This document shows, one piece after another, positions 21,308 through 59,297 of a stretch of DNA of 64,000 nt; position 1 is the first letter of the stretch; each line of letters opens with the position of its first letter. Below the pieces are notes generated by a model. That model searched no databases. It was given only the letters and a program-made list of their open reading frames with translations, and was not told where the DNA came from. The DNA lies in IMG/VR virus record IMGVR_UViG_3300024336_000005, positions 62,001 through 126,000 of that record. One strand, given 5' to 3'. Made by a program: the position numbers and the translations under genes.

Positions 21308-21568
21308 ATGAAGAATTTCCTTTTGGCGATGTGTATCGCCTTCGCATCGGTTGGCTGTCAGTCAGCTGGTGAGGTCAATGGCCGAGAGGTCGATTGTGTC
21401 GGGGCCTTCGAGGAGAAGAGCCCTCGTTACAAGTACAAGGTCGCAACTTGGAACATCATCGGCGGGGTGGTGTTCTCTGAGATGGCGTTCATTCCGCCTC
21501 TCTATGTGATCCTTTCAGCGACCCATTGCCCGGTCGCTGAGAAGGGCGAGGCTCCTCTTCGGAACTAG
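21308..21568 (+). CDS. putative lipoprotein
   Basis: signal peptide with lipobox-like SVGC. Confidence 0.75.
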   Translation: MKNFLLAMCIAFASVGCQSAGEVNGREVDCVGAFEEKSPRYKYKVATWNIIGGVVFSEMAFIPPLYVILSATHCPVAEKGEAPLRN

Positions 21569-21587
21569 GGTCTTTGGAGTTGTAAAA

Positions 21588-21962
21588 ATGGCAATTGAGA
21601 AAATGCTGGACGCGGCAGCTGATTGGTGGTTCGCACAGTTCCAGAACCCCACGAAGGACAACGGAGCTTCAGATTTTGCCAATTTGATGGCTCAAGGGAT
21701 GGCTCTGGAACTTGCGAACAGTACGCCGTGTCCTACCGACCCGCGTCCCTTCGGGGATGCGTTGAAGAAGGCTTACGCTGATCGTCCTTTTAACACCTTG
21801 TCAGCAGACTATGCTCCAGGCGGACCTCTCGCTGATGCGATGGATACGGCGGGTATCTCTCGGGAGAGAGCCCCTTGGAAGACGGTCATGTGGCTCGAGC
21901 TGGGCCGCGTGGTCGTGCGGGCGGGGTATGGAGCCCCGGAAGTGGTGATTTTTCGATCCTAA
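21588..21962 (+). CDS. hypothetical protein
   Basis: ORF in array. Confidence 0.8.
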   Translation: MAIEKMLDAAADWWFAQFQNPTKDNGASDFANLMAQGMALELANSTPCPTDPRPFGDALKKAYADRPFNTLSADYAPGGPLADAMDTAGISRERAPWKTVMWLELGRVVVRAGYGAPEVVIFRS

Positions 21963-21974
21963 AGGTTCACAGTC

Positions 21975-22014
21975 TAAGATACCCTTAAGTGGGCGGAGGG
22001 GTGAAAGGCCCCTA
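21975..22014 (+). repeat. 40-nt direct repeat copy 1 (copy 2 at 22183-22223)
   Basis: TAAGATACCCTTAA(G/C)TGGGCG..GGGGTG(A/G)AAGGCCCC..TA. Confidence 0.85.
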
Positions 22015-22032
22015 AGGTAAACAAGCTTTTTT

Positions 22033-22163
22033 AGAGGGATGCTCAGGGCAGGTTCATACCTGGAGGTTCGAATCCTCACGGGCTACGGCCCGGAGGGCAT
22101 TAAGTAGTCCTTCCTTTGAATCAGAGAGGAGGGAGCGCCGAAATCAACAGAGCTGATTCCTCT
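22033..22163 (+). ncRNA. circularly permuted tRNA-like RNA (YrlA-type topology)
   Basis: T-arm GAGG-TTCGAAT-CCTC, then closed stem CGGGC-TACG-GCCCG, then D-like GGGC-ATTAAGTA-GTCC; outer stem AGAGG..GCTC/GAGC..CCTCT. Confidence 0.6.
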
Positions 22164-22182
22164 ATTGATGCCTCTAAGAGTT

Positions 22183-22223
22183 TAAGATACCCTTAACTGG
22201 GCGAGGGGGTGGAAGGCCCCCTA
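22183..22223 (+). repeat. 40-nt direct repeat copy 2
   Basis: matches 21975-22014. Confidence 0.85.
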
Positions 22224-22224
22224 T

Positions 22225-22328
22225 GGACCATTAAGCTCAAGTGGTTGCAGTCGCTGTTAAGACTCAACCCAAAGGATAGAGCTTCTTCCCCAGAGGAGAG
22301 GTTGCAGGTTCGACACCTGCATGGTTCA
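22225..22328 (+). ncRNA. tRNA-like RNA with hairpin inserted in D-loop and 6-nt anticodon loop
   Basis: acceptor GGACCAT/ATGGTTC, T-arm GCAGG-TTCGACA-CCTGC, insert 22244-22268. Confidence 0.65.
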
Positions 22329-22333
22329 CTAAT

Positions 22334-22408
22334 GGGCCTCAAGCTTTAGCGGTGAAGCAGTTGACTTTTAATCTTCAGAACAGGGTTCGAGTCCCTGGGG
22401 GCCCACCA
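22334..22408 (+). tRNA. trnK: tRNA-Lys(UUU)
   Basis: cloverleaf, loop CTTTTAA, CCA end; two mismatches in anticodon stem. Confidence 0.8.
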
Positions 22409-22567
22409 TGATTCTTGCGTTTTTGTCTACTGTGATTATCTATCAGATTTGGGTGTTCATTTTTGGAGGGAGGCCATTTCTCCGCTTCTTCTTTGGATAT
22501 ATTCATTTTGGGTATGATATCTTCTTGACAATCTTCTTGATCTTTCTGGTAAAGGGAATGACTTGAG
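22409..22567 (+). CDS. small membrane protein
   Basis: hand-translated hydrophobic 52-aa ORF. Confidence 0.45.
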
Positions 22568-22763
22568 CAACCGCAAGAAGATCCTCGCTGGCATTTTGCG
22601 AGTAGAGGCTGAAAACAAACGTCGCTTAGATCCCAACGGTGAGTTTCCTTCGTGTAAGGCCATTTTGGGCACCACGCAGTGCGAGCGCTGTGGCTATGAG
22701 ACTTCTCCGGGAGTTTGCATTGCAGCTCGTTCGTATGAACGATGGACTGTTAGACCAGGCTGA
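22563..22763 (+). CDS. hypothetical protein
   Basis: small ORF. Confidence 0.5.
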   Translation: MSNRKKILAGILRVEAENKRRLDPNGEFPSCKAILGTTQCERCGYETSPGVCIAARSYERWTVRPG

Positions 22764-22880
22764 TGTAATCAAAATGAGGTGCTTATGCCTGTAGTCTTTT
22801 TATTGATGTGGCTGTTCAACTATATAAGTGGTGGAATCTTTCTGTTCTTGTTCTTGGCGTGGATAGTCTTATCAGATTGA

Positions 22881-22954
22881 TCGCGGATCGTCTAATGGCA
22901 GGACGCGGGTTTTTGGTGCCCGCTATCTAGGTTCGAATCCTAGTCCGCGAGCCA
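22881..22954 (+). tRNA. trnQ: tRNA-Gln(UUG)
   Basis: TCGCGGA/TCCGCGA acceptor, CGGGT-TTTTGGT-GCCCG, GCCA end. Confidence 0.9.
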
Positions 22955-22960
22955 AATCAT

Positions 22961-23035
22961 GGGTCTCGGACCGGCTGGTTGTCGGGGGGCGTCTTATAAG
23001 CGCCTTTAAGCAGAGTTCAATTCTCTGGGGGCCTA
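22961..23035 (+). tRNA. trnI: tRNA-Ile(UAU)
   Basis: GGCGT-CTTATAA-GCGCC anticodon arm, T-arm CAGAG-TTCAATT-CTCTG; atypical D arm. Confidence 0.75.
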
Positions 23036-23053
23036 CATAACGAAAGTAAAAAA

Positions 23054-23383
23054 ATGAATCGTGTTGCTGTTGCTTCCGTCATCGTAATCGTCCTCATGGG
23101 AGGCCTTCTGGGGTTTCAGTTGCTGAAAACGCAGGTGGAGCCTCCCCCTACGCCTCAGACCGAAGAGTACAAAGCCGAGGTTGCTTCTTGCTATCAGGAG
23201 AAGGAGTTGGCGCGATGTGAGTGTCTTGAGCGCGTGCTCATCACTTCGGCCAACGATGACTCCCTCCCCTCTGTGGTTGAGGGTTGTTACACTCGCTTTG
23301 GTCGTGGCAAGGATGGCAAGGCCAAGATGGCCGCCACAAAGGCTGCGAAGTGGGCCGCCAAGAAGTTCCTGGAAGAGAACTAG
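23054..23383 (+). CDS. secreted/membrane protein
   Basis: N-terminal TM segment, Cys pattern. Confidence 0.75.
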   Translation: MNRVAVASVIVIVLMGGLLGFQLLKTQVEPPPTPQTEEYKAEVASCYQEKELARCECLERVLITSANDDSLPSVVEGCYTRFGRGKDGKAKMAATKAAKWAAKKFLEEN

Positions 23384-23868: not shown

Positions 23869-24487
23869 GGGGGTGTCAGGTTTCGACAGGGTATAAATAG
23901 GAAGCGATAGCAGGTCCCGCTAAGAACGGCAGCGGGTTAGAAAGCAAGTTCAAATTGTAAACGGCAACGTAAACAACATGGCGGTGGCTGCCTGATAGCT
24001 TCCCTTCGGGGAATCTATTGGTAGTGCATACCCTCTAGTCTCTGAGTTAGACCTCTTTAAGTAAGGGCTAGAGTACGTGAAATTGAGGAATCGGACAAAG
24101 AAAAGTCCAATGTCGAGTGGATGGAAACTGAAGCTTCGTAGCTGCTTGCAGATACGAGATTGGGAACGTGGTAACACGTACAAGGATAAGCCAAACTAGT
24201 TGCGGAAGACCTCCTTGATGGTTAAGAGCTACCCGCTGACAGTAAACTCATCAAAGGAAATCGTATTACTCTTTTGATGAACCTATAAGTACGAACCTCC
24301 CTGGTTGTTTCTACCATGAGGGGAGTGAGAAAACAGAGCAAGGCGCAGCTTGGGGCCGACAGGAGTTAGCCTCAAGTGGAGTGGCAAGTGCAAATCCTCT
24401 CATTTGTTTTCATCTAAATGAAACTAAACCTGTAGAAGTTGTATTTCGAAAATGTTCTGGACGGGAGTTCAATTCTCCCCACCTCCA
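23869..24487 (+). ncRNA. ssrA: tmRNA (unusually long, 619 nt)
   Basis: 5' GGGGGTGTCAGGTTTCGAC, tag ORF 23957-23995 (A)VNGNVNNMAVAA*, 3' CTAAACCTGTAG...GGACGGGAGTTCAATTCTCCCCACCTCCA. Confidence 0.9.
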
Positions 24488-24808
24488 CATTTCTTCACGC
24501 TGAGTGGCCGTGCTGATTGACGGCGGCTGAAAGCAAACGCAATAAACTACTCGCGCGCTTGGGTTAACCAACCGGAATCAAACAGGATACTGTTCGCGCG
24601 AAATCGGTTAGCCAGCCCTAATAGGTAGTGAGCGTTTGTAGAAAGTGTCTTAGACGGTATGTCAGGGAAGGTACAACCTGGACTCCGGATAGGCGTGAGG
24701 TGGTTCAGGGTTGTAGGTAAGAGAACGGAAAAGGTAATCTGAAAACGCCTTTCTGAAACCCATAAACCTAACAAAGGGGAGCCCGAGTGGTGCAAGCAGC
24801 CCCCAGAG

Positions 24809-24950
24809 AGTTGAAAAGCTAGGCTCTCCAGTTTCTCATAACTTATAGCTCTAGCTTAAGTTCTAGAGCGCGCCCTCCGAAGGTTGAGATTTGGGTGTAA
24901 GAATCCCAAGAGCTATAAGTTATGAAAAATTAGAGCCTAGCTTTTCAGTT
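24809..24950 (+). ncRNA. degenerate tRNA-like core (loop CTCCGAA) inside a long inverted repeat
   Basis: TTGAAAAGCTAGGCTCT..TCATAACTTATAGCTCT pairs with AGAGCTATAAGTTATGA..AGAGCCTAGCTTTTCAG. Confidence 0.65.
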
Positions 24951-25039
24951 TCTGACATAGAGTAACCCTGGCCCGGGGAAATACAGGGCTTGAGTGATCC
25001 GATAAATGGGTCCTGACTTTAACCTCTATGTCGATTAGA

Positions 25040-25170
25040 CGTGCCAGCTAACCACTGGCTAGTGGGAGTGGCGAGAATCCCACGATGAGAAGCGGAGTCG
25101 TTTCCGTAAAAAAAGCCCCGGACCTCGGAGAGGTCGGCAATCTTCTGTCGTTAGTCCCTAAACCATGGAG
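25040..25170 (+). ncRNA. structured ncRNA, copy A (copy B at 36471-36614)
   Basis: conserved blocks with compensatory stem changes between copies. Confidence 0.7.
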
Positions 25171-26215
25171 TAGTGTGATGAGAGGCTTGCCTCAGTGATT
25201 CACAGTTATCGATGAAGTGGAGGGGATAGAGAAGCTGTGGTGTGCAGCCATAGTGGCTTGGGGTTTTAACCGCGAAGCCAAATTTCTGCCCCACCAATAG
25301 GGTAAAAATGGGATGCTTGGTGATCATCTAAAACATCCTTGAGCTATGCAGTATGCTCAAGCGCCCGCCTGGGTAATCCAGTGGGTTTAGAGAGGACATG
25401 GTGCTCCTCCTGGATACATAGCCATAAAGCCTTATTGGTTGGAGGCGGCTGTGTAATACCGACCACAATACTAGATAGTAATTTAATGTTGGAGCAACTT
25501 TCTAGTTACAGTTGCTCCCGTCTACTAGCGACGAATATAAACCGATTATGCTAGTTAAATCGGAGAATTAGGCCCTTCGGCGGTAGGAGTTCCCGCGTGG
25601 TCACTGTGCTTTTATACCCACAGACTACATATATGGATTGGGCCATTTTACCAGATGATCTGTCCCGGCAGATGCATAGGCAGCCACCTCGTTAAAAACT
25701 GGTACCGGGCACTATCTTGCAGTGGAAGCTCTTAGACCTCCGATATAAAGGGGGATTAGGTAAATCTTAGGTGCCTAAGTTAGCGAACCTGGAAGCGCCC
25801 CACGGGCAGGACTTAGCCATCCCTCATGGTGAAAGCACAAGCTGAGGGGCTTGTGTTGGTTCAATGTCTCTACACCGTTCCTGCCGGTTATGCAGGAGAG
25901 TGTTGTGAGTTCCGTGTGAGAACTCTCATGTGTGGCTGGCATTAATTGATAAGCGGGTAGAGTCGCTTATCAACAGCTCTCGACGCGGGCGAGTAAACAG
26001 AGGGGTTGCTCCTTCTGCCCGCACTCTTCTGTTCCGTCTGTAGGGTAAAAGCAGCGGGCCCGATTGGTGGGCTACGATATAATACGGACCAATTGAGGTT
26101 GGGAATCTTAAACAACAAGCTCTCGAAATTACAGAATCAGAGAGCATTCCTCTTGGCCTGGCAAGTTAAGAAGCTTAGCGGCTTCAACCAGGACCTTTTC
26201 TACAAGGAAAAAGAA

Positions 26216-27867: not shown

Positions 27868-28137
27868 ATGATTCTTGAGTCACTTGAGCAAGGGGAATAC
27901 ATTCTCTTTGTTGAGATAGACGCACAACAAGCCTTTGCAGTTGAAGGATCCTACGAAGGCCCTCAGTGAGTTCCTGTTCAGGATGGGTGGATTGCAACTA
28001 TTTATGCCCGTAAAGGGGACCTAAATATTGCCATACAAGATCATCTCGAGGCTGGAAGAAAGGCCTTCTGGGTCTCCGCCGAAGACGTGAGAGTTCCACA
28101 AATGCATGTGAAGCACACCTGGAGTGGCTTGGCATAA
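27868..28137 (+). pseudogene. small ORF interrupted by one in-frame TGA at 27967
   Basis: RBS+ATG; frame continues 55 sense codons past TGA to TAA. Confidence 0.45.
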
Positions 28138-28173
28138 TATTAAGCTGGGGGTTCGAATCCTCCCACCGGCTCC
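28121..28173 (+). other. tRNA remnant lacking anticodon arm
   Basis: GGAG/CTCC ends, GCTT..AAGC hairpin, T-arm GGGGG-TTCGAAT-CCTCC. Confidence 0.35.
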
Positions 28174-28196
28174 TTCAACAATAAGAAAGAAAAATC

Positions 28197-28893: not shown

Positions 28894-28985
28894 CAAGAAG
28901 TAAGCGTAAATGGTACTGCTACTGGCCTAAGGTCGAAAGACCTGAATCCGGTGTGTTGGAGGTTCGAATCCTCCCTTCTTGGCCA
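28894..28985 (+). tRNA. tRNA-like (probably Gln CUG-derived) with GAAA hairpin inserted in anticodon loop
   Basis: CAAGAAG/CTTCTTG acceptor, GCCA end, AGGTC-GAAA-GACCT in loop. Confidence 0.65.
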
Positions 28986-29225: not shown

Positions 29226-29421
29226 TAGGAGTTGAGATCCAGTTCCCGTCGGGGTGCCTACTGGTTAAACAAAAAGGCTCGATGAGTAGACTTGTGTCTG
29301 GAGAGACTCCGCCGGTTCGAGGCAGACGGTGCTCAAAGCCTCCCTTTTCTTGGAGAGTGAGATGGTTAAACTAATAGGGCATGTCCCTGAGACAAAGAGG
29401 GGTCCCTTTAGGCGCAATACA

Positions 29422-30105
29422 ATGGAAGCTAAGGTAATGGAAACTCGACAGGAACGTCATGAGAGACATCTCAGGACGATGAGAGCGTATTTGGCAGGAG
29501 GGGAGAATTTCCTGGCCGCCAAGGCTCTCCAATTTGCAAAGAATCTAATGACAGGACTAAGGAAGGATGGGGAAACTCCAGCCTTCCACCATCCCCTGTC
29601 GGTGGCTCGCTACTTACGAGCTCACCGTCGTAGTCTTATTTATGGAGAGGAGACCATTGCGGCTGCCTTTCTTCATGATATCCTCGAAGACTTTGGTGAT
29701 ACTGTCACTAGAGAGCAACTTAGAGACCTGTTTGGGGAAAGAGTAGCGACTGCCGTATGGGCTCTCAGCAAGAAGAGCAACGGAACGTCAAAGACTCCCG
29801 ATACCTACTTCATGGGCATTGCATCTAATGAGATTGCATCTGTTGTGAAGGCTGTAGATCGATTGCACAATCTCCACACCATGGAGGGCGTGTTCTCTGT
29901 TGAGAAGCAATTGGACTACATCAAAGAAGCAAGAGATAGATTTATCCCCATGCTTATCGAAGCAGGAGATAGGTTTCCCGAACAGTTTGATGTCTATGAA
30001 AACCTCAAGATGAACTTGAGGCTTCAAACCATCCCGATGGAACGACTGTGCGAAGCTTTGATGAGGCTAAAAGATGAAGTTCGAAGCGGTGATTGTCGAG
30101 GGTGA
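29422..30105 (+). CDS. RelA/SpoT-type HD-domain hydrolase (small alarmone hydrolase-like)
   Basis: HPLSVA, AAFLHDILED, VKAVDRLHNLHTM. Confidence 0.8.
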   Translation: MEAKVMETRQERHERHLRTMRAYLAGGENFLAAKALQFAKNLMTGLRKDGETPAFHHPLSVARYLRAHRRSLIYGEETIAAAFLHDILEDFGDTVTREQLRDLFGERVATAVWALSKKSNGTSKTPDTYFMGIASNEIASVVKAVDRLHNLHTMEGVFSVEKQLDYIKEARDRFIPMLIEAGDRFPEQFDVYENLKMNLRLQTIPMERLCEALMRLKDEVRSGDCRG

Positions 30106-33652: not shown

Positions 33653-34711
33653 ATGAGTGATTATCCAGATGGAACCATTATTGTAGGTCTCCAGGATGGA
33701 GACGAAAGCAAGGGAAAGGTGGCGGCGGCTCTTTGTTCGCTACCGCAAGTGACCCATTGTGTTCGCTATAGTGGTGGACAGAATGCAGGCCATGTTTTCT
33801 ACAAGGATGGCCTACAGGTTGTCACTCATATCATTCCCTCTGGGATTGTATATGGGAAGGTCTCGGTGATTGGTCCTGGCTGCGCCTTCTCTGAGAAGGG
33901 CTTCTGGGCTGAGCTAGAAGACATTTGTGATGCACTGGGGGAGACCATGTTGAATCTCTCTCGCTTGATCAAGATCTCCCCTGCTGCTCATATCGTCCAG
34001 GACAAGCACATCGTTTTGGATGAGGCGACAGACAAGATTGGATCTACCAAGAGAGGGATCGCCCCAGTCTATGCCGATAAGGCTATGAGGACGGGCATCC
34101 GAGCCGAGAGCATTCCAAGCCTAAAGCCTTTCTTGTGGGATACGACTAAGCTCAATGACCCAAAGAATGTCATCGTATTTGAAGGGGCTCAAGGCTTTGG
34201 CCTTGATCCTGATGTAGGAGATTATCCCTATATCACCAGCTCCTCCTCTCTCCCTGGTGCGATCAACAATGTTGGTGTGCCCATCTGGGCAATCAATAAG
34301 ATTGTTGGAGTTGCAAAGCTCTATGCGACCTATGTTGGGACCAAGGAATTCGAGCCAGATCTAGAGATTTTCTCAAAGCTTCGTGAGCTCGGAGGGGAGT
34401 ATGGCTCGACCACAGGCCGTCCTCGACAGTGCAACTGGTTGAATCTTGATACTCTCATCACTGCTATTCGAACCTGTGGTTGTACTACGGTCGTCTTCAG
34501 CAAGTGCGACATCATTGAACAGCTTGGCGTTTTCAAGTTGATTGATGGTGGTACAGTTCGAGAGTTCGGGAATATGGCTGGCATGATTGCTCACATTAAG
34601 CGAGAGCTTAAGGAGGAGGCACCAAGTACAAGTCTAATCTTTAGTGGCAGTCAATACACAGTTGAAGATGACTATGGCCATCTTGCTGAAGAGCCGATGG
34701 GAGAGATTTGA
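33653..34711 (+). CDS. purA: adenylosuccinate synthetase (short form)
   Basis: GDESKGK, GGQNAGH, GSTKRGI, FEGAQG, YPYITSS, EYGSTTGRPR. Confidence 0.9.
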   Translation: MSDYPDGTIIVGLQDGDESKGKVAAALCSLPQVTHCVRYSGGQNAGHVFYKDGLQVVTHIIPSGIVYGKVSVIGPGCAFSEKGFWAELEDICDALGETMLNLSRLIKISPAAHIVQDKHIVLDEATDKIGSTKRGIAPVYADKAMRTGIRAESIPSLKPFLWDTTKLNDPKNVIVFEGAQGFGLDPDVGDYPYITSSSSLPGAINNVGVPIWAINKIVGVAKLYATYVGTKEFEPDLEIFSKLRELGGEYGSTTGRPRQCNWLNLDTLITAIRTCGCTTVVFSKCDIIEQLGVFKLIDGGTVREFGNMAGMIAHIKRELKEEAPSTSLIFSGSQYTVEDDYGHLAEEPMGEI

Positions 34712-40772: not shown

Positions 40773-42416
40773 ATGAACTACGGTAAGACTGTTAGCAACG
40801 CTATCAACAATGGTCCAGTTTCTCAGCCTATCATCGGTAGGCCCGAGATGGTAAAGAACAGCACTGAGGGCTTTGTCTTCAACACCACTTCTGAGGCAGC
40901 GCTTGAGCGCTTCCTCATTCTTGGCACTGAAGGCGGCACTTACTATGCCAGCGAGAGCCGAGCTACAGTTGATGCGGCAAAGAATGTCATCGAGATGGCT
41001 GTTGCTGGCAACGTAGATGTAGTCAGTACCATCATCAAGGTCGCTACTGCTCGTCCCTCTCGTGCGCCAAAGATGGAGCCTTCCTTGTTTGCTCTTGCAG
41101 TTTGTACCGCAAAGGGCACCCCCGAGGTAAAAGCTAAGGCGCTCAGCGCGCTGAGCGCGGTTTGCCGTATCCCCACTCATCTGTTTACCTTTCTTCAGGC
41201 CCACAAGGATCTGGGAGGCAAGACCGGTGGGCGCAGCTTCCAGCGAGCCCTACAGAATTGGTATCTTGAGAAGGATCCCTCTAAGCTGGCTTATCAGGTT
41301 GTGAAGTATCAGGGGAGGAATGGCTGGACTCACCGTGATGTTCTTCGGCTTGCCCGCCCTAAGGCTCAGACCCCTGAGCAGAACTCTATTTTGAGTTGGG
41401 CTGTGAATGGTTCGCTGCCTCTGGCAGTAAGTTCTGAAGCGGGTGCTTATCTTGTGGCGGCGAATGAGCTGCTGCGAGGGGAGCCGACGAAGCAGCGTGC
41501 AATCAACTTGATTGAGTCTCATGGGTTCACCCATGAGATGGTTCCGACTAAGCTTCAGAAGGACCCTGATATCTGGGCAGCTTTGCTTCCCCGCATGCCT
41601 ATCAATGCAATGGTTCGCAACCTTGGTCGGATGACTGCCAATGGTCTGATTGTTCCATTCAGTGCCACAACTCAGAGCGTGGTGGAGAAGCTTGAGAATG
41701 TGGATGCCCTTCGCAAGAGCCGCATCCATCCGCTCAACGTTTACGTGGCCTTGCGTACCTATCAGCAGGGCAAGGGCACTCGAGGTTCGTTGACTTGGCG
41801 TCCTGATGCTCAGATCTTGAGCGCACTAGAAGGAGCATTCTACAATGCTTTCGGGAATGTAGAACCGACTGGTAAGCGCTTCATGGTGGGCCTGGATGTA
41901 AGCGGCAGCATGGGTGGATTCTATGGCTACGGCTATAACAGTACTGTGAACCAGACTGGCCTTATGGGGATTCCTGGGTTTACGCCTTATGAGGCAGAAA
42001 CCCTTATGTCCCTTTTGGTTGCAAAGACTGAGAAGCAGACCTTCTTTGGTGGGTTTTCAGACAACTTCACTCCCCTTGCTATCAACTCCCGTGATAACAT
42101 GAGCTCGGCTCTTCAGAAGATCCGATCACTCCGCATGGGTTCCACTAGGATTGCTGCTCCGATGGAGTATGCCACCAAGAACAGGATTCCGGTGGATTGC
42201 TTCCAGATCTACACCGACAATGAAGTGAACATGGGCGGACATCCTTGTCAGACCCTTGAGAAGTATCGTCAGGCTACTGGCATCAATGCGGCCATGGTCG
42301 TATGCGCTATGACCTCTACGAATTTCACTGTGGCCGACCCGAAGGATCCGAAGCAGCTTGATGTTGTTGGATTTGACACGGCAGTGCCAGCTTTGATTCG
42401 ACAGCTTTTGGTGTAA
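40773..42416 (+). CDS. rsr: Ro60/Rsr TROVE-domain RNA-binding protein
   Basis: LERFLILGTEGGTYY, KYQGRNGWTHRDVLRLARP, VRNLGRMT, IHP, vWA MIDAS DVSGSM, YTDNE, DVVGFD. Confidence 0.97.
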   Translation: MNYGKTVSNAINNGPVSQPIIGRPEMVKNSTEGFVFNTTSEAALERFLILGTEGGTYYASESRATVDAAKNVIEMAVAGNVDVVSTIIKVATARPSRAPKMEPSLFALAVCTAKGTPEVKAKALSALSAVCRIPTHLFTFLQAHKDLGGKTGGRSFQRALQNWYLEKDPSKLAYQVVKYQGRNGWTHRDVLRLARPKAQTPEQNSILSWAVNGSLPLAVSSEAGAYLVAANELLRGEPTKQRAINLIESHGFTHEMVPTKLQKDPDIWAALLPRMPINAMVRNLGRMTANGLIVPFSATTQSVVEKLENVDALRKSRIHPLNVYVALRTYQQGKGTRGSLTWRPDAQILSALEGAFYNAFGNVEPTGKRFMVGLDVSGSMGGFYGYGYNSTVNQTGLMGIPGFTPYEAETLMSLLVAKTEKQTFFGGFSDNFTPLAINSRDNMSSALQKIRSLRMGSTRIAAPMEYATKNRIPVDCFQIYTDNEVNMGGHPCQTLEKYRQATGINAAMVVCAMTSTNFTVADPKDPKQLDVVGFDTAVPALIRQLLV

Positions 42417-43923: not shown

Positions 43924-44012
43924 GCCAGATGATGACCTAATTGGATAGGCGACACACTGTGAATGTGTTTGGCGAAAGCCTTTAGCGGGTTCGAATCCCG
44001 TCATTTGGCCCA
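43924..44012 (+). tRNA. trnH: tRNA-His(GUG) with long variable arm
   Basis: G-1:C73, ACACA-CTGTGAA-TGTGT, GGC-GAAA-GCC extra arm, CCA. Confidence 0.88.
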
Positions 44013-47318: not shown

Positions 47319-47493
47319 ATTGAACTGAAGAGATCTAGGTTATCACTATAAAGGCTCGGCCCTCTTAACAGAGGTTTGCAGGTTCGAATCCTGTCGATCC
47401 GAAAGGATCGTGGCGAAATGGTAAACGCACCGAATATAAGTACCGGGGACCTTGAAAGAGGAATCCAATCTCCTAACTCGTCCCTTGTTCAAT
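47319..47493 (+). ncRNA. putative Y RNA 4, YrlA-type with permuted tRNA domain
   Basis: ATTGAACTGA/TTGTTCAAT; T-arm GCAGG-TTCGAAT-CCTGT, CGATCC-GAAA-GGATCG, D-arm GCG-AAATGGTAAA-CGC. Confidence 0.85.
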
Positions 47494-48500: not shown

Positions 48501-48583
48501 TCGGGGGTGATGAAACTGGCATATATGCTCGACTCTGAATCGAGTGCTTCGGCGTGAGGGTTCGAATCCCTCCTCCCGATCCA
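48501..48583 (+). tRNA. tRNA with CUG (Gln) anticodon on a class II (Leu/Ser-like) body
   Basis: CTCGA-CTCTGAA-TCGAG, variable arm TGCTTCGGCGT, U73, CCA. Confidence 0.85.
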
Positions 48584-50780: not shown

Positions 50781-50868
50781 CTAGCGAGCGGGCGGTGGAC
50801 GCCCAACCGTGCTGTACAGCGGTGGTGCTTTGATGCACAACTGGGTTCGATTCCTAGGCGCTAGACCA
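50781..50868 (+). tRNA. Tyr-like class II tRNA with 8-nt anticodon loop
   Basis: ACCGT-GCTGTACA-GCGGT, GTGC..GCAC arm, 5-bp D stem, ACCA. Confidence 0.65.
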
Positions 50869-52038: not shown

Positions 52039-52121
52039 GTGCCCTTTGGCGGAATGGTAGACGCACGTAATGGTCCCCTCCGGCTTAGAGGGGTGCAGGT
52101 TCGACTCCTGTAAGGGTGCCA
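52039..52121 (+). ncRNA. tRNA-like RNA lacking a normal anticodon arm
   Basis: acceptor, Leu-type D arm and T arm present; only CGTAATGGT then CCCCTC-CGGCTTA-GAGGGG. Confidence 0.6.
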
Positions 52122-52638: not shown

Positions 52639-52705
52639 AGCTGAGAGGAAAGCCCCATATTCTAGGAAGCCTTGACAGTTCGGAGAGACGAACGCTTTAT
52701 CTTAT

Positions 52706-53039
52706 CCAGGAGGTGGGCTTAGAAGCAGCCATCCTTTAAAGAGTGGGCATAGATGAAGCTTAACCGATTGATCTTATCTAATCATGACACGGATAGGAGA
52801 AGCTTAAGTTAGCACCTCTCAATAAATTCGAATTGGACCCAGGTTGGCTTCCTGGTTGGCCTTTACGAGAGAGTCTTGTAAGAAAGCGGGAAGAGACTTA
52901 GTCAGTCTTATAAAGAGAGCGAAACCGAACGCAACTCTTTGTTCTATTTTAGAACTGGTGTGAATCCTATGACGGGATGTATTTGGTTAACAAACGAGAG
53001 AATTGACTCTGCCCTCCTTTTAGCGTAATAGCACACTGG
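52706..53039 (+). ncRNA. 23S rRNA H43-H44 (uL11-binding GTPase centre) mimic with 278-nt insertion
   Basis: CCAGGAGGTGGGCTTAGAAGCAGCCATCCTTTAAAGAGT [insert 52745-53022] GCGTAATAGCACACTGG; no other rRNA sequence nearby. Confidence 0.85.
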
Positions 53040-54369: not shown

Positions 54370-54378
54370 GAATTCCGA

Positions 54379-54598
54379 GAGGACAATCTAAGATTTAATC
54401 TTAGACTAAACGTCACTGACATCTAGGTTCGAATCCTAGGCCCGCAACCATGTGCCTGCGCGATGCATCATAAGCAGCTCTTCAATGGGGGAGTGGTGGG
54501 TGAAAGTCCCATGGCACAACATAATGCGGGTTGGCGAAACTGGTATACGCGGGGACTTGTCCCTGTCAGACATGACACTTAAGCTTAAGCTATTCCTC
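54379..54598 (+). ncRNA. circularly permuted tRNA-like RNA on a long stem
   Basis: T-arm + GCCCGCA-ACCA precede TGCGGGT + D-arm; closed by CTGACA/TGTCAG and GAGGA/TCCTC. Confidence 0.8.
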
Positions 54599-59164: not shown

Positions 59165-59297
59165 TCTGGTGTCGCTTAATGGTAGAGCAGGCGGCTGTGG
59201 TTTATTGCAAGGGCATTACAAGGGTCTTAACCTTGGTAGGCCTCATAACCGCCCGGGGGAAACTCCATTGTAGGTTCGACTCCTACCACCAGAGCCA
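59165..59297 (+). tRNA. interrupted tRNA (Asn-like) with 47-nt insert in anticodon loop and long variable arm
   Basis: TCTGGTG/CACCAGA, G73, CCA; GGCGG-CTGT[59199-59245]TAA-CCGCC. Confidence 0.75.

What the first reader, a model, noticed from the sequence alone, without database searches (positions are those of the whole stretch)
22225..22328. tRNA body with an anticodon-like hairpin grafted into its D-loop
Seen: good acceptor and T arms, and a defective 6-nt true anticodon loop. The D-loop carries GTTG.AGTC-GCTGTTAA-GACT.CAAC, whose loop contains CUGUUAA (the Asn anticodon loop). Inference: a non-translating decoy for anticodon nucleases or modification enzymes.
Basis: partly seen in the sequence, partly recalled or inferred. 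Interest (0 to 1): 0.6.

Follow-up and report, generated by a model that had tools for sequence, protein, structure and literature searches.

The report
tRNA-shaped RNA with extra hairpin
At the head of a giant phage's tRNA gene cluster sits a well-folded tRNA look-alike that cannot decode and carries an extra hairpin showing the asparagine anticodon loop; it is most likely a tRNA mimic, but no relative or expression data could be found to test this.

Summary
Window 22225-22328 (+) folds as a tRNA: a 7-bp acceptor stem, a 5-bp D stem, a 5-bp anticodon stem with only a 6-nt loop (CCCAGA), and a canonical T arm. A 9-bp bulged hairpin sits in the D-loop, and its 8-nt loop GCUGUUAA contains the tRNA-Asn heptamer. 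All 31 pairs are Watson-Crick or G-U. The nucleotides for tertiary pairs are present (by inspection).

Neither ARAGORN nor Rfam calls it a tRNA. With the 31-nt insert removed in silico, ARAGORN at a relaxed threshold finds a tRNA with a 6-nt anticodon loop.

It is the first tRNA-shaped unit of a cluster of about 32 tRNAs in a 204-kb uncultivated phage. That cluster has no canonical tRNA-Asn or tRNA-Gly. The phage also encodes tmRNA, Ro60, an RNA ligase and a kinase.

"Non-translating" is supported by structure. "Decoy" is untested. No homologue was found in viral, bacterial or metagenome collections, and four assemblies are 100% identical, so covariation could not be tested.

Best reading: a non-decoding tRNA mimic that displays an anticodon-loop-like hairpin. 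The main rival is a recently disabled tRNA gene. Weaker leads are a link to a newly noticed YrlA-like Y RNA and a shared 42-nt leader.

Interest is moderate: an unusual architecture seen in a single genome.

The parts
22225..22328 (+). tRNA-shaped RNA gene (104 nt, including discriminator A22328; no encoded CCA: ...UUCA|CUAAU)
   Evidence: not called by ARAGORN at default or by Rfam
22225..22231 (+). acceptor stem, 5' strand GGACCAU (pairs with 22321-22327 AUGGUUC)
   Evidence: 7 of 7 pairs, probability 0.65-1.0
22234..22238 (+). D stem, 5' strand AGCUC (pairs with 22279-22283 GAGCU); flanked by canonical D-loop residues AAGUGG ... GGAUA
   Evidence: 5 of 5 pairs; ensemble probability 0.27 because of a competing helix
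22243..22269 (+). hairpin inserted in the D-loop: GGUUG[C]AGUC / GACUCAACC, 9 bp with one bulged C; 8-nt loop GCUGUUAA (22253-22260) containing CUGUUAA
   Evidence: pair probabilities 0.87-1.0; CTGTTAA at 22254; single copy in IMG/VR
22284..22299 (+). arm in the canonical anticodon position: UCUUC-CCCAGA-GGAGA, 5 bp, 6-nt loop (22289-22294)
22304..22320 (+). T arm GCAGG-UUCGACA-CCUGC
   Evidence: 5 of 5 pairs, probability about 1.0
22179..22220 (+). 42-nt leader, copy B, immediately 5' of the tRNA-like RNA. Small hairpin UAAG-AUACC-CUUA, then CUGGGCGA, then hairpin GGGGG-UGGAAGG-CCCCC. It contains CUUAAC/UGGG (22192-22201), complementary to both odd loops.
21971..22012 (+). 42-nt leader, copy A (88% identical to copy B). 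Its second hairpin is one base pair shorter through a paired G/C difference.
   Evidence: only two copies in the whole 204-kb contig and none elsewhere in IMG/VR
22013..22178 (+). Body behind leader A. Four consecutive hairpins with a T-arm look-alike second (GAGG-UUCGAAU-CCUC). Then two long hairpins whose 7-nt loops GAAUCAG (22118-22124) and CUGAUUC (22153-22159) are exact complements.
22334..22408 (+). tRNA-Lys(UUU), 5 nt downstream. Low Rfam score (32.4 bits), with two U.U mismatches in the anticodon stem.

Best explanation
It is a non-decoding tRNA mimic, transcribed as the first tRNA-shaped unit of the phage's tRNA cluster.

Shown:
- It has every helix of a tRNA, and the residues for the tertiary pairs are in place (by inspection).
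- Its anticodon-position loop has only 6 nt.
- A 9-bp hairpin is placed in the length-variable part of the D-loop, between AAGU and GGAUA, so G18-G19, A21 and the Levitt pair A15-U48 can still form.

Inferred:
- It is cut out like a tRNA: RNase P at G22225, and RNase P at tRNA-Lys 5 nt downstream, followed by 3' trimming.
- It folds into an L-shape and is stable.
- It cannot read codons. Instead it holds out from the elbow a hairpin whose loop copies the tRNA-Asn anticodon loop.

The mechanism I think most likely is that the hairpin, on a tRNA body, occupies a host or phage factor that recognises tRNA-Asn-type (UGUU) anticodon loops. Candidates are an anticodon nuclease of a defence system, a modification enzyme such as Tgt, or AsnRS. 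This would spare real tRNA or titrate the factor.

My probabilities: about 0.5 that it is a functional non-decoding tRNA-like RNA, and about 0.2-0.25 that the function is this anticodon-loop mimicry. The 0.3 confidence given for this explanation applies to the statement as a whole, mechanism included.
For: Structure:
- All 31 pairs in five helices are Watson-Crick or G-U; the T-loop is UUCGACA.
- By inspection of the sequence: U8, A14, A15/U48, GG and A21 are present, and the insert lies exactly in a variable D-loop pocket, with a canonical 3' half of the D-loop (GGAUAGAGC) retained.
- z = -2.86, and 0 of 200 shuffles fold as well.
- ARAGORN calls the insert-less body a tRNA with a 6-nt loop.

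Sequence and context:
- The loop holds the exact heptamer of bacterial and phage tRNA-Asn anticodon loops. Compare Catera tRNA-Asn, GGACUGUUAAUCC.
- Asn is one of only two amino acids without a canonical tRNA among about 32 tRNAs over about 83 kb.
- It is 5 nt from the next tRNA, on the same strand as all the others.
- The cluster carries an RNA ligase, a polynucleotide-kinase-like kinase, two metallophosphoesterases, Ro60 and tmRNA. This is an RNA repair and surveillance toolkit.
- It is preceded by a 42-nt leader kept in two copies, with a paired G/C change that lengthens a hairpin.

Parallels:
- tRNA-shaped genes with perfect stems but 6-nt anticodon loops recur in other dense, phage-like tRNA arrays (L025, L109/L137).
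- This phage repeatedly grafts small hairpins onto tRNAs.
- PARIS AriB is published to cleave tRNA-Lys(UUU), Thr(UGU) and Asn(GUU), and phage tRNAs counter it (PMC12409363).
Against: - No homologue was found, so there is no evidence of conservation or covariation.
- Four independent assemblies are 100% identical over all the DNA compared (4.5 to 20 kb per pair), so there is no population signal either.
- There is no expression evidence, and no sigma-70-like promoter in 21500-23100.
- The mimic is imperfect. The loop has 8 nt, not 7, and is closed by C-G on a 4-bp segment plus a bulge. Positions 36-39 read UAAG, whereas AriB targets share UAAU.
- A decoy has to be abundant or bind tightly, and neither is known.
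- The D stem is only a minority fold in the thermodynamic ensemble (0.27).
- CCA is not encoded, although 19 of 26 neighbouring tRNAs encode it.
Confidence: 0.3

Rival explanations
1. A recently disabled tRNA gene (pseudogene). A class I tRNA lost one anticodon-loop nucleotide and acquired a 31-nt palindromic insertion in its D-loop. The CUGUUAA is a coincidence and the RNA has no role.
For: - It is not recognised by tRNA finders.
- It has a 6-nt anticodon loop and a large insert.
- There is no encoded CCA and no homologue anywhere.
- The same window holds several other damaged or orphan tRNA-like pieces: 28894-28982, 52040-52120, 59165-59297, and T-arm orphans near 28151 and 54427. Decay products are therefore plausible in this cluster.
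Against: - Every helix is perfect (31 of 31 pairs) and the tertiary-pair residues are intact, which is not what drift gives unless the damage is very recent.
- The insert is itself a clean 9-bp hairpin placed in a structurally tolerant pocket.
- It is not a repeated mobile element; it is a single copy in IMG/VR.
- It has no close parent among the phage's own tRNAs; the best identity is about 74%, which is background level.
- GUU matches one of the two missing isotypes.
- The leader is kept in two copies with a paired change.
Confidence: 0.3
2. It is part of the phage's Ro60/Y-RNA system. Leader plus body A and leader plus body B would be two Y-RNA-like RNAs that share a 5' protein-binding module, as YrlA and YrlB do. 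Alternatively, the candidate's loop (G)CUGUUAA kisses the V-loop UUAACA(G) of the YrlA-like RNA at 47347-47428, joining it to Ro60.
For: - The phage encodes Ro60 (TROVE plus vWA_Ro60, 40773-42416).
- A YrlA-like module (T arm, closed acceptor hairpin, D arm) lies at 47376-47428: Rfam YrlA 21.1 bits, E = 0.028 in a local search.
- Its preceding hairpin carries the only TTAACAG on the + strand of the window, the exact complement of CUGUUAA.
- In mycobacteriophage Catera, two adjacent RNAs upstream of the Ro gene share a 5' module.
- Bacterial Y RNAs mimic tRNA, and D. radiodurans Yrn1 has a 6-nt 'anticodon' loop (PMC4201824).
- Body A has the V-T-AS-D order of hairpins and two exactly complementary 7-nt loops, so loop-loop pairing seems to be used at this locus.
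Against: - The candidate is 18.4 kb from the Ro60 gene, whereas published Y RNAs lie within 4 kb.
- There is no GNCGAAN0-1G or CGAA motif in 22173-22328.
- The only Rfam YrlA signal there (14.4 bits) is the known tandem-tRNA artefact.
- The candidate's acceptor stem is open, not closed.
- In the MFE fold the partner loop is only UAAC, with U and A,G paired.
- A single 7-mer match is a post hoc finding.
Confidence: 0.12
3. It is the phage's working tRNA-Asn, made usable by an unknown rearrangement or splicing step or by an unconventional fold. One such fold is D-armless: 22243-22269 as a long anticodon arm and 22280-22303 as a variable arm.
For: - No canonical tRNA-Asn was found in the cluster.
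- The loop carries CUGUUAA.
- The MFE fold is acceptor + hairpin + 9-bp hairpin + T arm.
- Other phage-like arrays carry odd 92-nt tRNA-Asn(GUU) genes with a long extra arm beside a normal one (L025, L058).
- The phage has an RNA ligase and a kinase.
Against: - The loop has 8 nt on a 9-bp stem, nested inside the D stem.
- No contiguous deletion gives a canonical tRNA-Asn; a transposition of segments would be needed (inspection).
- There is no bulge-helix-bulge motif at the insert borders (inspection).
- At 31 nt it is far too short for a group I intron.
- The discriminator is A, whereas G73 is the rule for bacterial tRNA-Asn (general knowledge).
- The arm in the true anticodon position, with a canonical 4-nt variable loop and Levitt partner, marks the body as an ordinary class I tRNA.
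Confidence: 0.05
4. The tRNA-like fold is only one state of a longer structured transcript (about 21965-22333). The 5' leader either pairs with both odd loops (CUUAAC with GUUAAG, CUGGG with CCCAG) until RNase P removes it, or acts as a nut-like antitermination signal (a boxA-like CCCUUAAC, an 8-nt spacer, then a boxB-like GGGGU-GAAAG-GCCCC hairpin) for the long, hairpin-rich tRNA operon.
For: - The leader is kept twice, each time directly 5' of a structured body.
- Adjacent 6-nt and 5-nt complements to the two loops occur in 0.5% of shuffled leaders or of genomic windows.
- The single leader difference at 22197 (C in copy B, G in copy A) extends both pairings.
- The resemblance to lambda nut sites is recalled from memory.
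Against: - The complementarity was found post hoc and is short.
- The same leader in copy A has no equivalent partners beyond one 5-mer.
- The E. coli boxA consensus is not matched within 2 mismatches.
- The host is unknown.
- This reading explains the leader, not the D-loop hairpin.
Confidence: 0.1

Closest known systems
YrlA-type bacterial and phage Y RNAs (Rfam RF02553; Chen et al. 2014, PMC4201824)
   Same: A non-decoding RNA with a tRNA-like module (T arm, D arm, acceptor-like stem), in genomes that encode Ro60, including tRNA-rich phages. M. smegmatis YrlA is cut by RNase P, and D. radiodurans Yrn1 has a 6-nt 'anticodon' loop.
   Different: YrlA is circularly permuted: its ends lie in the Ro-binding stem and its acceptor is closed by a loop. 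It carries GNCGAAN0-1G and lies within 4 kb of the Ro gene. The candidate has open acceptor ends, no such motif, lies 18.4 kb away and gets no genuine model hit. A better YrlA candidate lies at 47347-47428.
Phage tRNA variants that counter anticodon nucleases, e.g. T5 tRNA-Lys/Thr/Asn against PARIS AriB (PMC12409363; also PMC10264068, PMC11555353)
   Same: Phage-encoded, tRNA-shaped, and concerned with the anticodon loops of Lys(UUU) and Asn(GUU). The candidate is adjacent to an atypical tRNA-Lys(UUU).
   Different: Those are decoding tRNAs with a few substitutions in a normal 7-nt anticodon stem-loop. This RNA cannot decode and shows the Asn-like loop on an extra arm.
Anticodon-arm mimics that bind tRNA-recognising proteins, e.g. 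the E. coli thrS operator bound by ThrRS (from memory, not tested here)
   Same: A hairpin that copies an anticodon loop and acts by binding a protein, not by decoding.
   Different: Those mimics sit in mRNA leaders and regulate translation. This one sits on a free tRNA-shaped RNA.
Stable non-tRNA RNAs in phage tRNA clusters (T4 species 1 and 2 RNAs), and tRNA bodies used as carriers of other hairpins (engineered tRNA scaffolds, MHV68 tRNA-miRNA units) (from memory)
   Same: Co-transcribed and co-processed with tRNAs. The tRNA fold provides processing and stability for an attached element.
   Different: No sequence relation is known. In those cases the extra element replaces the anticodon arm or follows the tRNA; it is not inserted in the D-loop.
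Natural non-canonical tRNAs (review PMC7609411)
   Same: [quoted passage not shown]
   Different: In the passages of the review that I searched (terms D-loop, D-arm, phage, extra; 12 of 26 shown), D-loops of 4-11 nt and D stems of 3-6 bp are given and no hairpin inserted in a D-loop appears.

Membership tests
tRNA (Rfam RF00005 / ARAGORN) | 7-bp acceptor stem and a T arm with a T-Psi-C-type loop | tested here: met
   7 of 7 and 5 of 5 pairs; loop UUCGACA
tRNA (Rfam RF00005 / ARAGORN) | D arm with a 3-5-bp stem and a loop of about 7-11 nt | tested here: not met
   The stem is present, but it encloses 40 nt including a 9-bp hairpin
tRNA (Rfam RF00005 / ARAGORN) | 7-nt anticodon loop with U33 on a 5-bp stem in the canonical position | tested here: not met
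   5-bp stem, but a 6-nt loop CCCAGA
tRNA (Rfam RF00005 / ARAGORN) | Model score at or above the curated threshold (29 bits), or a default ARAGORN call | tested here: not met
   No tRNA hit at gathering score or at E<=10 on 21900-22450; not in the ARAGORN list
tRNA-Asn anticodon stem-loop | Loop heptamer CUGUUAA | tested here: met
   22254-22260; the same heptamer as in Catera tRNA-Asn
tRNA-Asn anticodon stem-loop | 7-membered loop closed by a regular 5-bp stem | tested here: not met
   8-nt loop GCUGUUAA; 4 bp, a bulged C, then 5 bp
YrlA / bacterial Y RNA | Encoded within about 4 kb of the Ro60 gene, on the same strand | tested here: not met
   Same strand, but 18.4 kb upstream of 40773-42416
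YrlA / bacterial Y RNA | GNCGAAN0-1G motif near the 5' end | tested here: not met
   No match between 22173 and 22328 in the motif list
YrlA / bacterial Y RNA | T arm, then a closed acceptor-like hairpin, then a D arm; a hit by the Rfam model | tested here: not met
   The only hit is 14.4 bits, spanning the candidate's T arm and the next tRNA's D arm. This is the tandem-tRNA artefact described in PMC4201824
YrlA / bacterial Y RNA | Bound by Ro60 | not testable with these tools
   Needs co-purification or a gel shift
Archaeal/eukaryal-type tRNA intron | Bulge-helix-bulge motif at the exon-intron borders, with removal giving a functional tRNA | tested here: not met
   Only a 1-nt bulge is present. 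The body without the insert still has a 6-nt anticodon loop. Genuine intron-bearing tRNA-Asn genes from metagenomes look different: their insert follows CUGUUA and ends in ACAG
Group I intron in a bacterial or phage tRNA | Insert of some 200 nt or more with a group I fold, usually in the anticodon loop | tested here: not met
   The insert is 31 nt and lies in the D-loop. No intron family hit
   Context only

The most novel reading that the evidence does not exclude
A new class of phage RNA: a tRNA body used as a processed, stable carrier. From its D-loop it displays a copy of a host anticodon loop, with its own anticodon loop shortened so that it cannot decode. It would act either as a trap for a tRNA-Asn-directed defence nuclease, or as an adaptor that kisses the complementary loop of the phage's YrlA-like Y RNA and so links tRNA-like substrates to the phage Ro60 particle. 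The 6-nt-loop tRNA-shaped genes seen in other phage arrays would be simpler members of the same idea.
Probability: 0.1. Interest if true: 0.8.

Novelty: new variant of a known kind. Interest (0 to 1): 0.5.

Why it matters
Phage tRNAs are now understood partly as counter-measures to bacterial nucleases that cut tRNA anticodon loops. All characterised examples are working tRNAs with small changes. An RNA that keeps the tRNA shape, gives up decoding and shows an anticodon loop on an extra arm would be a different tactic: mimicry or titration rather than replacement. It would be easy to test in laboratory strains.

It would also show that the D-loop of a tRNA fold can carry a sizeable hairpin in nature, which matters for RNA engineering. 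If it is only a broken gene, it is still a useful warning. In that case this phage's otherwise near-complete tRNA set lacks Asn and Gly, and the cluster contains many tRNA-like pieces that standard finders miss.

Tried and rejected
1. Close relatives by neighbouring proteins. The 124-aa ORF just upstream and the 1129-aa ORF have no relatives in 5.8 billion protein clusters. The IMG/VR loci L004 and L005 hold no tRNAs.

2. Population variation. L006, L007, L008 and L014/L015 are 100% identical to the window or to each other, so there is no signal.

3. DNA patterns in IMG/VR for the hairpin, the D-loop architecture and the leader found only the source contig or chance hits.

4. The one metagenome scan was badly chosen. 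The gap I allowed between CUGUUAA and the T-loop also fits ordinary intron-bearing tRNA-Asn genes. That collection therefore remains effectively unsearched for homologues.

5. The genome-contig scan for the same D arm with an 18-42-nt insert gave 62 hits, about as many as I estimate chance would give. None has a matching acceptor and T arm around an inserted D-loop.

6. GenBank phages (blastn, distant mode) returned only tRNA-Gln matches.

7. ARAGORN's relaxed alternative, tRNA-Leu(AAG) with a 13-nt intron, is rejected: weak D stem, a G.A pair, and it ignores the better helices.

8. A reading with the GUU hairpin as a normal anticodon arm is rejected. The D-stem 3' strand lies after the hairpin, and no acceptor partner exists upstream (inspection).

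9. The shared 8-mer UUGCAGUC and loop CCAGA with the 92-nt tRNA-Asn of L025 are rejected as homology, because both differ in the sister locus L058.

10. A repeated mobile palindrome is rejected: single copy.

11. A sigma-70 promoter or terminator in the leader: none found.

12. An exact boxA: not matched.

13. Literature searches for a described D-loop-inserted or decoy tRNA found none.
Full report
WHERE THE WINDOW COMES FROM

The window is positions 62,001-126,000 of IMGVR_UViG_3300024336_000005, a 204,008-bp uncultivated phage contig. The same phage is assembled in many samples. Four independent assemblies are identical to the window base for base wherever they overlap, and that includes the finding.

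All genes read on the + strand. From 22225 onward lies a long tRNA cluster:
- 26 ARAGORN tRNAs in the window.
- Six further tRNAs within 10 kb downstream, and none after that.
- A tmRNA at 23869-24490.

Interspersed proteins include a Ro60 orthologue (TROVE plus vWA_Ro60), an RNA ligase, two metallophosphoesterases, an HD phosphohydrolase and an adenylosuccinate-synthetase homologue. Just upstream is an AAA_33 kinase that also matches a polynucleotide-kinase PHROG. The Ro60 protein is 39% identical to the Ro-like proteins of Bxz1-type mycobacteriophages, which also carry many tRNAs and a tmRNA.

THE OBSERVATION

The helices are:
- Acceptor stem: GGACCAU/AUGGUUC.
- D stem: AGCUC/GAGCU.
- An arm in the canonical anticodon position: UCUUC-CCCAGA-GGAGA.
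- T arm: GCAGG-UUCGACA-CCUGC.
- Inside the D-loop, a hairpin GGUUG[C]AGUC-GCUGUUAA-GACUCAACC.

All 31 pairs are Watson-Crick or G-U. The fold is better than all 200 shuffles (z = -2.86).

The hairpin has one bulged C on its 5' arm rather than a symmetric mismatch, and it gains a ninth pair (G-C) at its base.

The insert sits between AAGU and GGAUA. The flanks read GCUC-AAGU...GGAUA-GAGC, which is a textbook D arm. U8, A14, an A15/U48 Levitt pair, GG for the T-loop contacts, A21 and U54/A58 are all available (inspection). Deleting the 31-nt insert in silico makes ARAGORN call a tRNA with a 6-nt anticodon loop at its 90% threshold.

As it stands, neither ARAGORN nor the Rfam tRNA model sees it, at gathering score or at E<=10 on the local stretch. 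The only Rfam signal is a 14.4-bit YrlA match that joins its T arm to the D arm of the next tRNA. The YrlA authors describe that artefact.

The thermodynamic MFE prefers to extend the anticodon hairpin to 9 bp at the expense of the D stem (cloverleaf -33.5 against -37.6 kcal/mol; D-stem probability 0.27). This is common for real tRNAs but should be kept in mind.

IS THE ASN-LIKE LOOP MEANINGFUL?

A loop fitting Y-U-NNN-R-N is cheap. But the cluster's 32 canonical tRNAs cover 18 amino acids and lack only Asn and Gly, and the loop carries exactly CUGUUAA. That is the heptamer of, for example, the Catera phage tRNA-Asn. I put the joint chance at about 1% (my arithmetic). So the hairpin probably is, or derives from, an Asn anticodon loop.

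It cannot work as one in the usual way:
- The loop has 8 nt.
- The stem has 9 bp.
- The hairpin leaves the D stem on its elbow side, so it points away from where an anticodon must be (inference from tRNA architecture).
- No contiguous deletion yields a canonical tRNA-Asn.
- There is no bulge-helix-bulge motif.
- 31 nt is far below group I intron size.

The arm in the true anticodon position has a canonical 5-bp stem, a 4-nt variable loop and a Levitt partner. The body is therefore an ordinary class I tRNA with one loop nucleotide too few.

WHAT SURROUNDS IT

A 42-nt stretch directly 5' of the RNA (22179-22220) is repeated 208 nt upstream (21971-22012, 88% identity). These are the only two copies in the contig and in IMG/VR. 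Each copy has a small hairpin (UAAG-AUACC-CUUA) and a G/C hairpin that differs between copies by one extra, compensated pair.

Behind the upstream copy lies a second structured body (22013-22178). It has four consecutive hairpins, the second being a T-arm look-alike. Two long hairpins follow, and their 7-nt loops GAAUCAG and CUGAUUC are exact complements.

In copy B the leader contains CUUAAC-UGGG (22192-22201). This is complementary to GUUAAG of the D-loop hairpin loop and to CCCAG of the 6-nt loop. Such an adjacent double match occurs in 0.5% of shuffled leaders or genomic windows, but I found it post hoc. From memory, the leader also looks like a lambda nut site (a boxA-like run, an 8-nt spacer, a GAAAG-capped 5-bp hairpin). 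However, the boxA consensus is not matched within two mismatches.

THIS PHAGE DECORATES ITS tRNAs

Several class I tRNAs carry an extra mini-hairpin capped by GAAA or UUCG in the variable region: His 43925, Gln 48501 and a second Lys(CUU). A Phe(GAA) copy has a 17-nt GAAA hairpin in its anticodon loop, and a His(GUG) copy has a 47-nt insert plus such an arm.

There are also T-arm-bearing orphans near 28151 and 54427, and an acceptor/D/T-complete RNA with an aberrant middle at 52040-52120. These can be read two ways. Either the cluster is littered with decaying tRNAs, or it makes many tRNA-shaped RNAs on purpose.

In favour of purpose: other dense, phage-like tRNA arrays fetched by chance contain perfect cloverleaves with 6-nt anticodon loops (L025, L109/L137). 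They also contain 92-nt tRNA-Asn(GUU) genes with a long extra arm beside a normal tRNA-Asn (L025, L058).

THE Ro60 LEAD

Bacterial and phage Ro60 proteins bind Y RNAs whose effector module mimics tRNA (PMC4201824; PMC12135203). Rfam finds the expected YrlA just upstream of the Ro gene in phage Catera (36 bits) but nothing at gathering score in our window.

By eye and then with a local search, I found a YrlA-like module at 47376-47428: T arm, GAAA-closed acceptor hairpin, UG, D arm (21.1 bits, E = 0.028). It lies 5 kb downstream of the Ro gene on the same strand. The hairpin just before it carries the only TTAACAG on the + strand of the window, the exact complement of the candidate's CUGUUAA.

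This could mean loop-loop pairing between the two RNAs, or it could be chance. In the MFE fold only UAAC of that heptamer is unpaired. The candidate itself fails each YrlA criterion that I could test: distance, motif, topology and model score.

SEARCH FOR RELATIVES

Every route failed.
- Neighbouring ORFs are orphans.
- The kinase's relatives are not syntenic.
- Five DNA patterns in IMG/VR found only the source contig or chance matches.
- A D-arm-with-insert pattern in 185,579 bacterial and archaeal genomes gave only chance matches.
- GenBank phages gave nothing.
- The body has no close parent among the phage's own tRNAs.

So there is no covariation, no conservation and no expression evidence. 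Everything functional below is inference.

WHAT IT MOST LIKELY IS

I think it is a non-decoding tRNA mimic (about 0.5). The argument rests on the perfect helices, the intact tertiary residues, the placement of a clean hairpin in a tolerant D-loop pocket, the conserved leader, the tight spacing to tRNA-Lys, and the recurrence of 6-nt-loop tRNA shapes in other arrays.

The hairpin copies the tRNA-Asn anticodon loop for a protein that recognises it. That protein could be a defence nuclease, Tgt, or AsnRS. PARIS AriB is published to cut Lys(UUU), Thr(UGU) and Asn(GUU), and the neighbour here is an atypical tRNA-Lys(UUU). The mimic is imperfect, with 8 nt and UAAG instead of UAAU.

The main rival (0.3) is a recently disabled tRNA gene. 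Smaller rivals are:
- A role with Ro60 and the YrlA-like RNA (0.12).
- A leader-dependent precursor structure or antitermination unit, which would explain the leader more than the hairpin (0.1).
- A true tRNA-Asn made by unknown processing (0.05).

NOVELTY AND SCORE

tRNA-like non-coding RNAs in phage tRNA clusters are a known kind (Y RNAs, tmRNA, T4 stable RNAs). Phage tRNAs as counter-defence are also known. A hairpin inserted in the D-loop of an otherwise intact tRNA body, bearing an anticodon-loop copy, is not among the natural non-canonical tRNAs in the passages I searched of PMC7609411, and I found no paper describing one.

I rate it a new variant of a known kind. Interest is 0.5. The architecture is unusual and readily testable, but it comes from a single clonal genome with no comparative or expression support.

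Noticed in passing
window 47347-47428 (+): An unannotated YrlA-like Y RNA module. It has a hairpin CCUC-UUAACA-GAGG, a T arm GCAGG-UUCGAAU-CCUGU, a GAAA-closed acceptor-like hairpin CGAUCC/GGAUCG, UG, and a D arm GCG-AAAUGGUAAA-CGC. Rfam YrlA scores 21.1 bits, E = 0.028 locally. It lies 5 kb downstream of the Ro60 gene (40773-42416) on the same strand. Its first loop holds the only TTAACAG on the + strand of the window, the complement of the finding's CUGUUAA.
   Followed up: partly
window 22013-22178 (+): A second structured RNA behind the other copy of the 42-nt leader. Four consecutive hairpins lie in the order V-like, T-like (GAGG-UUCGAAU-CCUC), closed stem CGGGC-UACG-GCCCG, D-like. Then come two long hairpins whose 7-nt loops GAAUCAG (22118-22124) and CUGAUUC (22153-22159) are exact complements, a likely kissing-loop pair.
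   Followed up: partly
window 21971-22012 and 22179-22220 (+): A 42-nt leader repeated twice, found nowhere else in the contig or in IMG/VR. The layout recalls a nut site: a pyrimidine-rich run CCCUUAA, an 8-nt spacer, and a 5-6-bp G/C hairpin capped by GAAAG or GGAAG. The boxA consensus is not matched. In copy B it is complementary to both odd loops of the finding.
   Followed up: partly
window 43925-44012, 48501-48583, 59165-59297; L015 14103-14190: Class I tRNAs (His, Gln-CUG, His copy 2, Lys-CUU copy 2) carry an extra mini-hairpin in the variable region, capped by a GAAA or UUCG tetraloop.
   Followed up: partly
window 28894-28982 and 59165-59297 (+): tRNA-Phe(GAA) with a 17-nt insert (AGGUC-GAAA-GACCU hairpin) in the anticodon loop, and tRNA-His(GUG) with a 47-nt insert after the anticodon. 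Uninterrupted Phe (L015 14234-14306) and His (43925) copies also exist. Both inserts are too short for group I introns.
   Followed up: partly
window 52040-52120 (+): A tRNA-like gene just below the Rfam threshold (28.6 bits), with good acceptor, D and T arms and encoded CCA. Its middle is aberrant (hairpin CCCCUC-CGGCUUA-GAGGGG).
   Followed up: partly
window 50781-50868 (+): A tRNA with an 8-nt anticodon loop (ARAGORN 'tgta') and a long extra arm. It could be a frameshifting tRNA or another non-decoding one.
   Followed up: no
window about 28100-28175 and about 54370-54450 (+): Orphan T-arm look-alikes (GGGGG-UUCGAAU-CCUCC; CUAGG-UUCGAAU-CCUAG) in non-coding gaps, without a recognisable cloverleaf. 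The first lies downstream of a GCCGAAG motif at 28078.
   Followed up: no
window 23869-26005 (+): The tmRNA match spans 622 nt, with about 340 nt not aligned to the model. It is followed by about 1.5 kb without ORFs of 60 aa or more (24490-26005) that looks highly structured. No Rfam family is matched.
   Followed up: no
window 52694-52759 (+): A 26.7-bit match to positions 1163-1246 of archaeal LSU rRNA (the L11/GTPase-centre region) in an intergenic gap. It could be an rRNA-fragment mimic.
   Followed up: no
window 33653-34711 and 29329-30105 (+): An adenylosuccinate-synthetase homologue of 352 aa, with an HD phosphohydrolase nearby. From memory, this pairing recalls PurZ/DatZ of phages with 2-aminoadenine DNA. 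Not tested.
   Followed up: no
L016 13986-16003: Further along the contig, a ThiF-family protein sits next to a 284-aa reverse transcriptase (RVT_1).
   Followed up: no
L025 (650-723, 3081-3172), L058 (943-1034), L109, L137: Other dense, phage-like tRNA arrays from metagenomes contain perfect cloverleaves with 6-nt anticodon loops. They also contain 92-nt tRNA-Asn(GUU) genes with a long extra arm next to a normal tRNA-Asn.
   Followed up: partly
L019-L138 (metagenome loci): More than 120 metagenomic tRNA-Asn(GUU) genes carry inserts of roughly 15-50 nt right after CUGUUA(A). The insert often ends in ACAG, which can pair with the anticodon loop. They look like canonical position-37/38 introns of archaeal or eukaryal type.
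   Followed up: no
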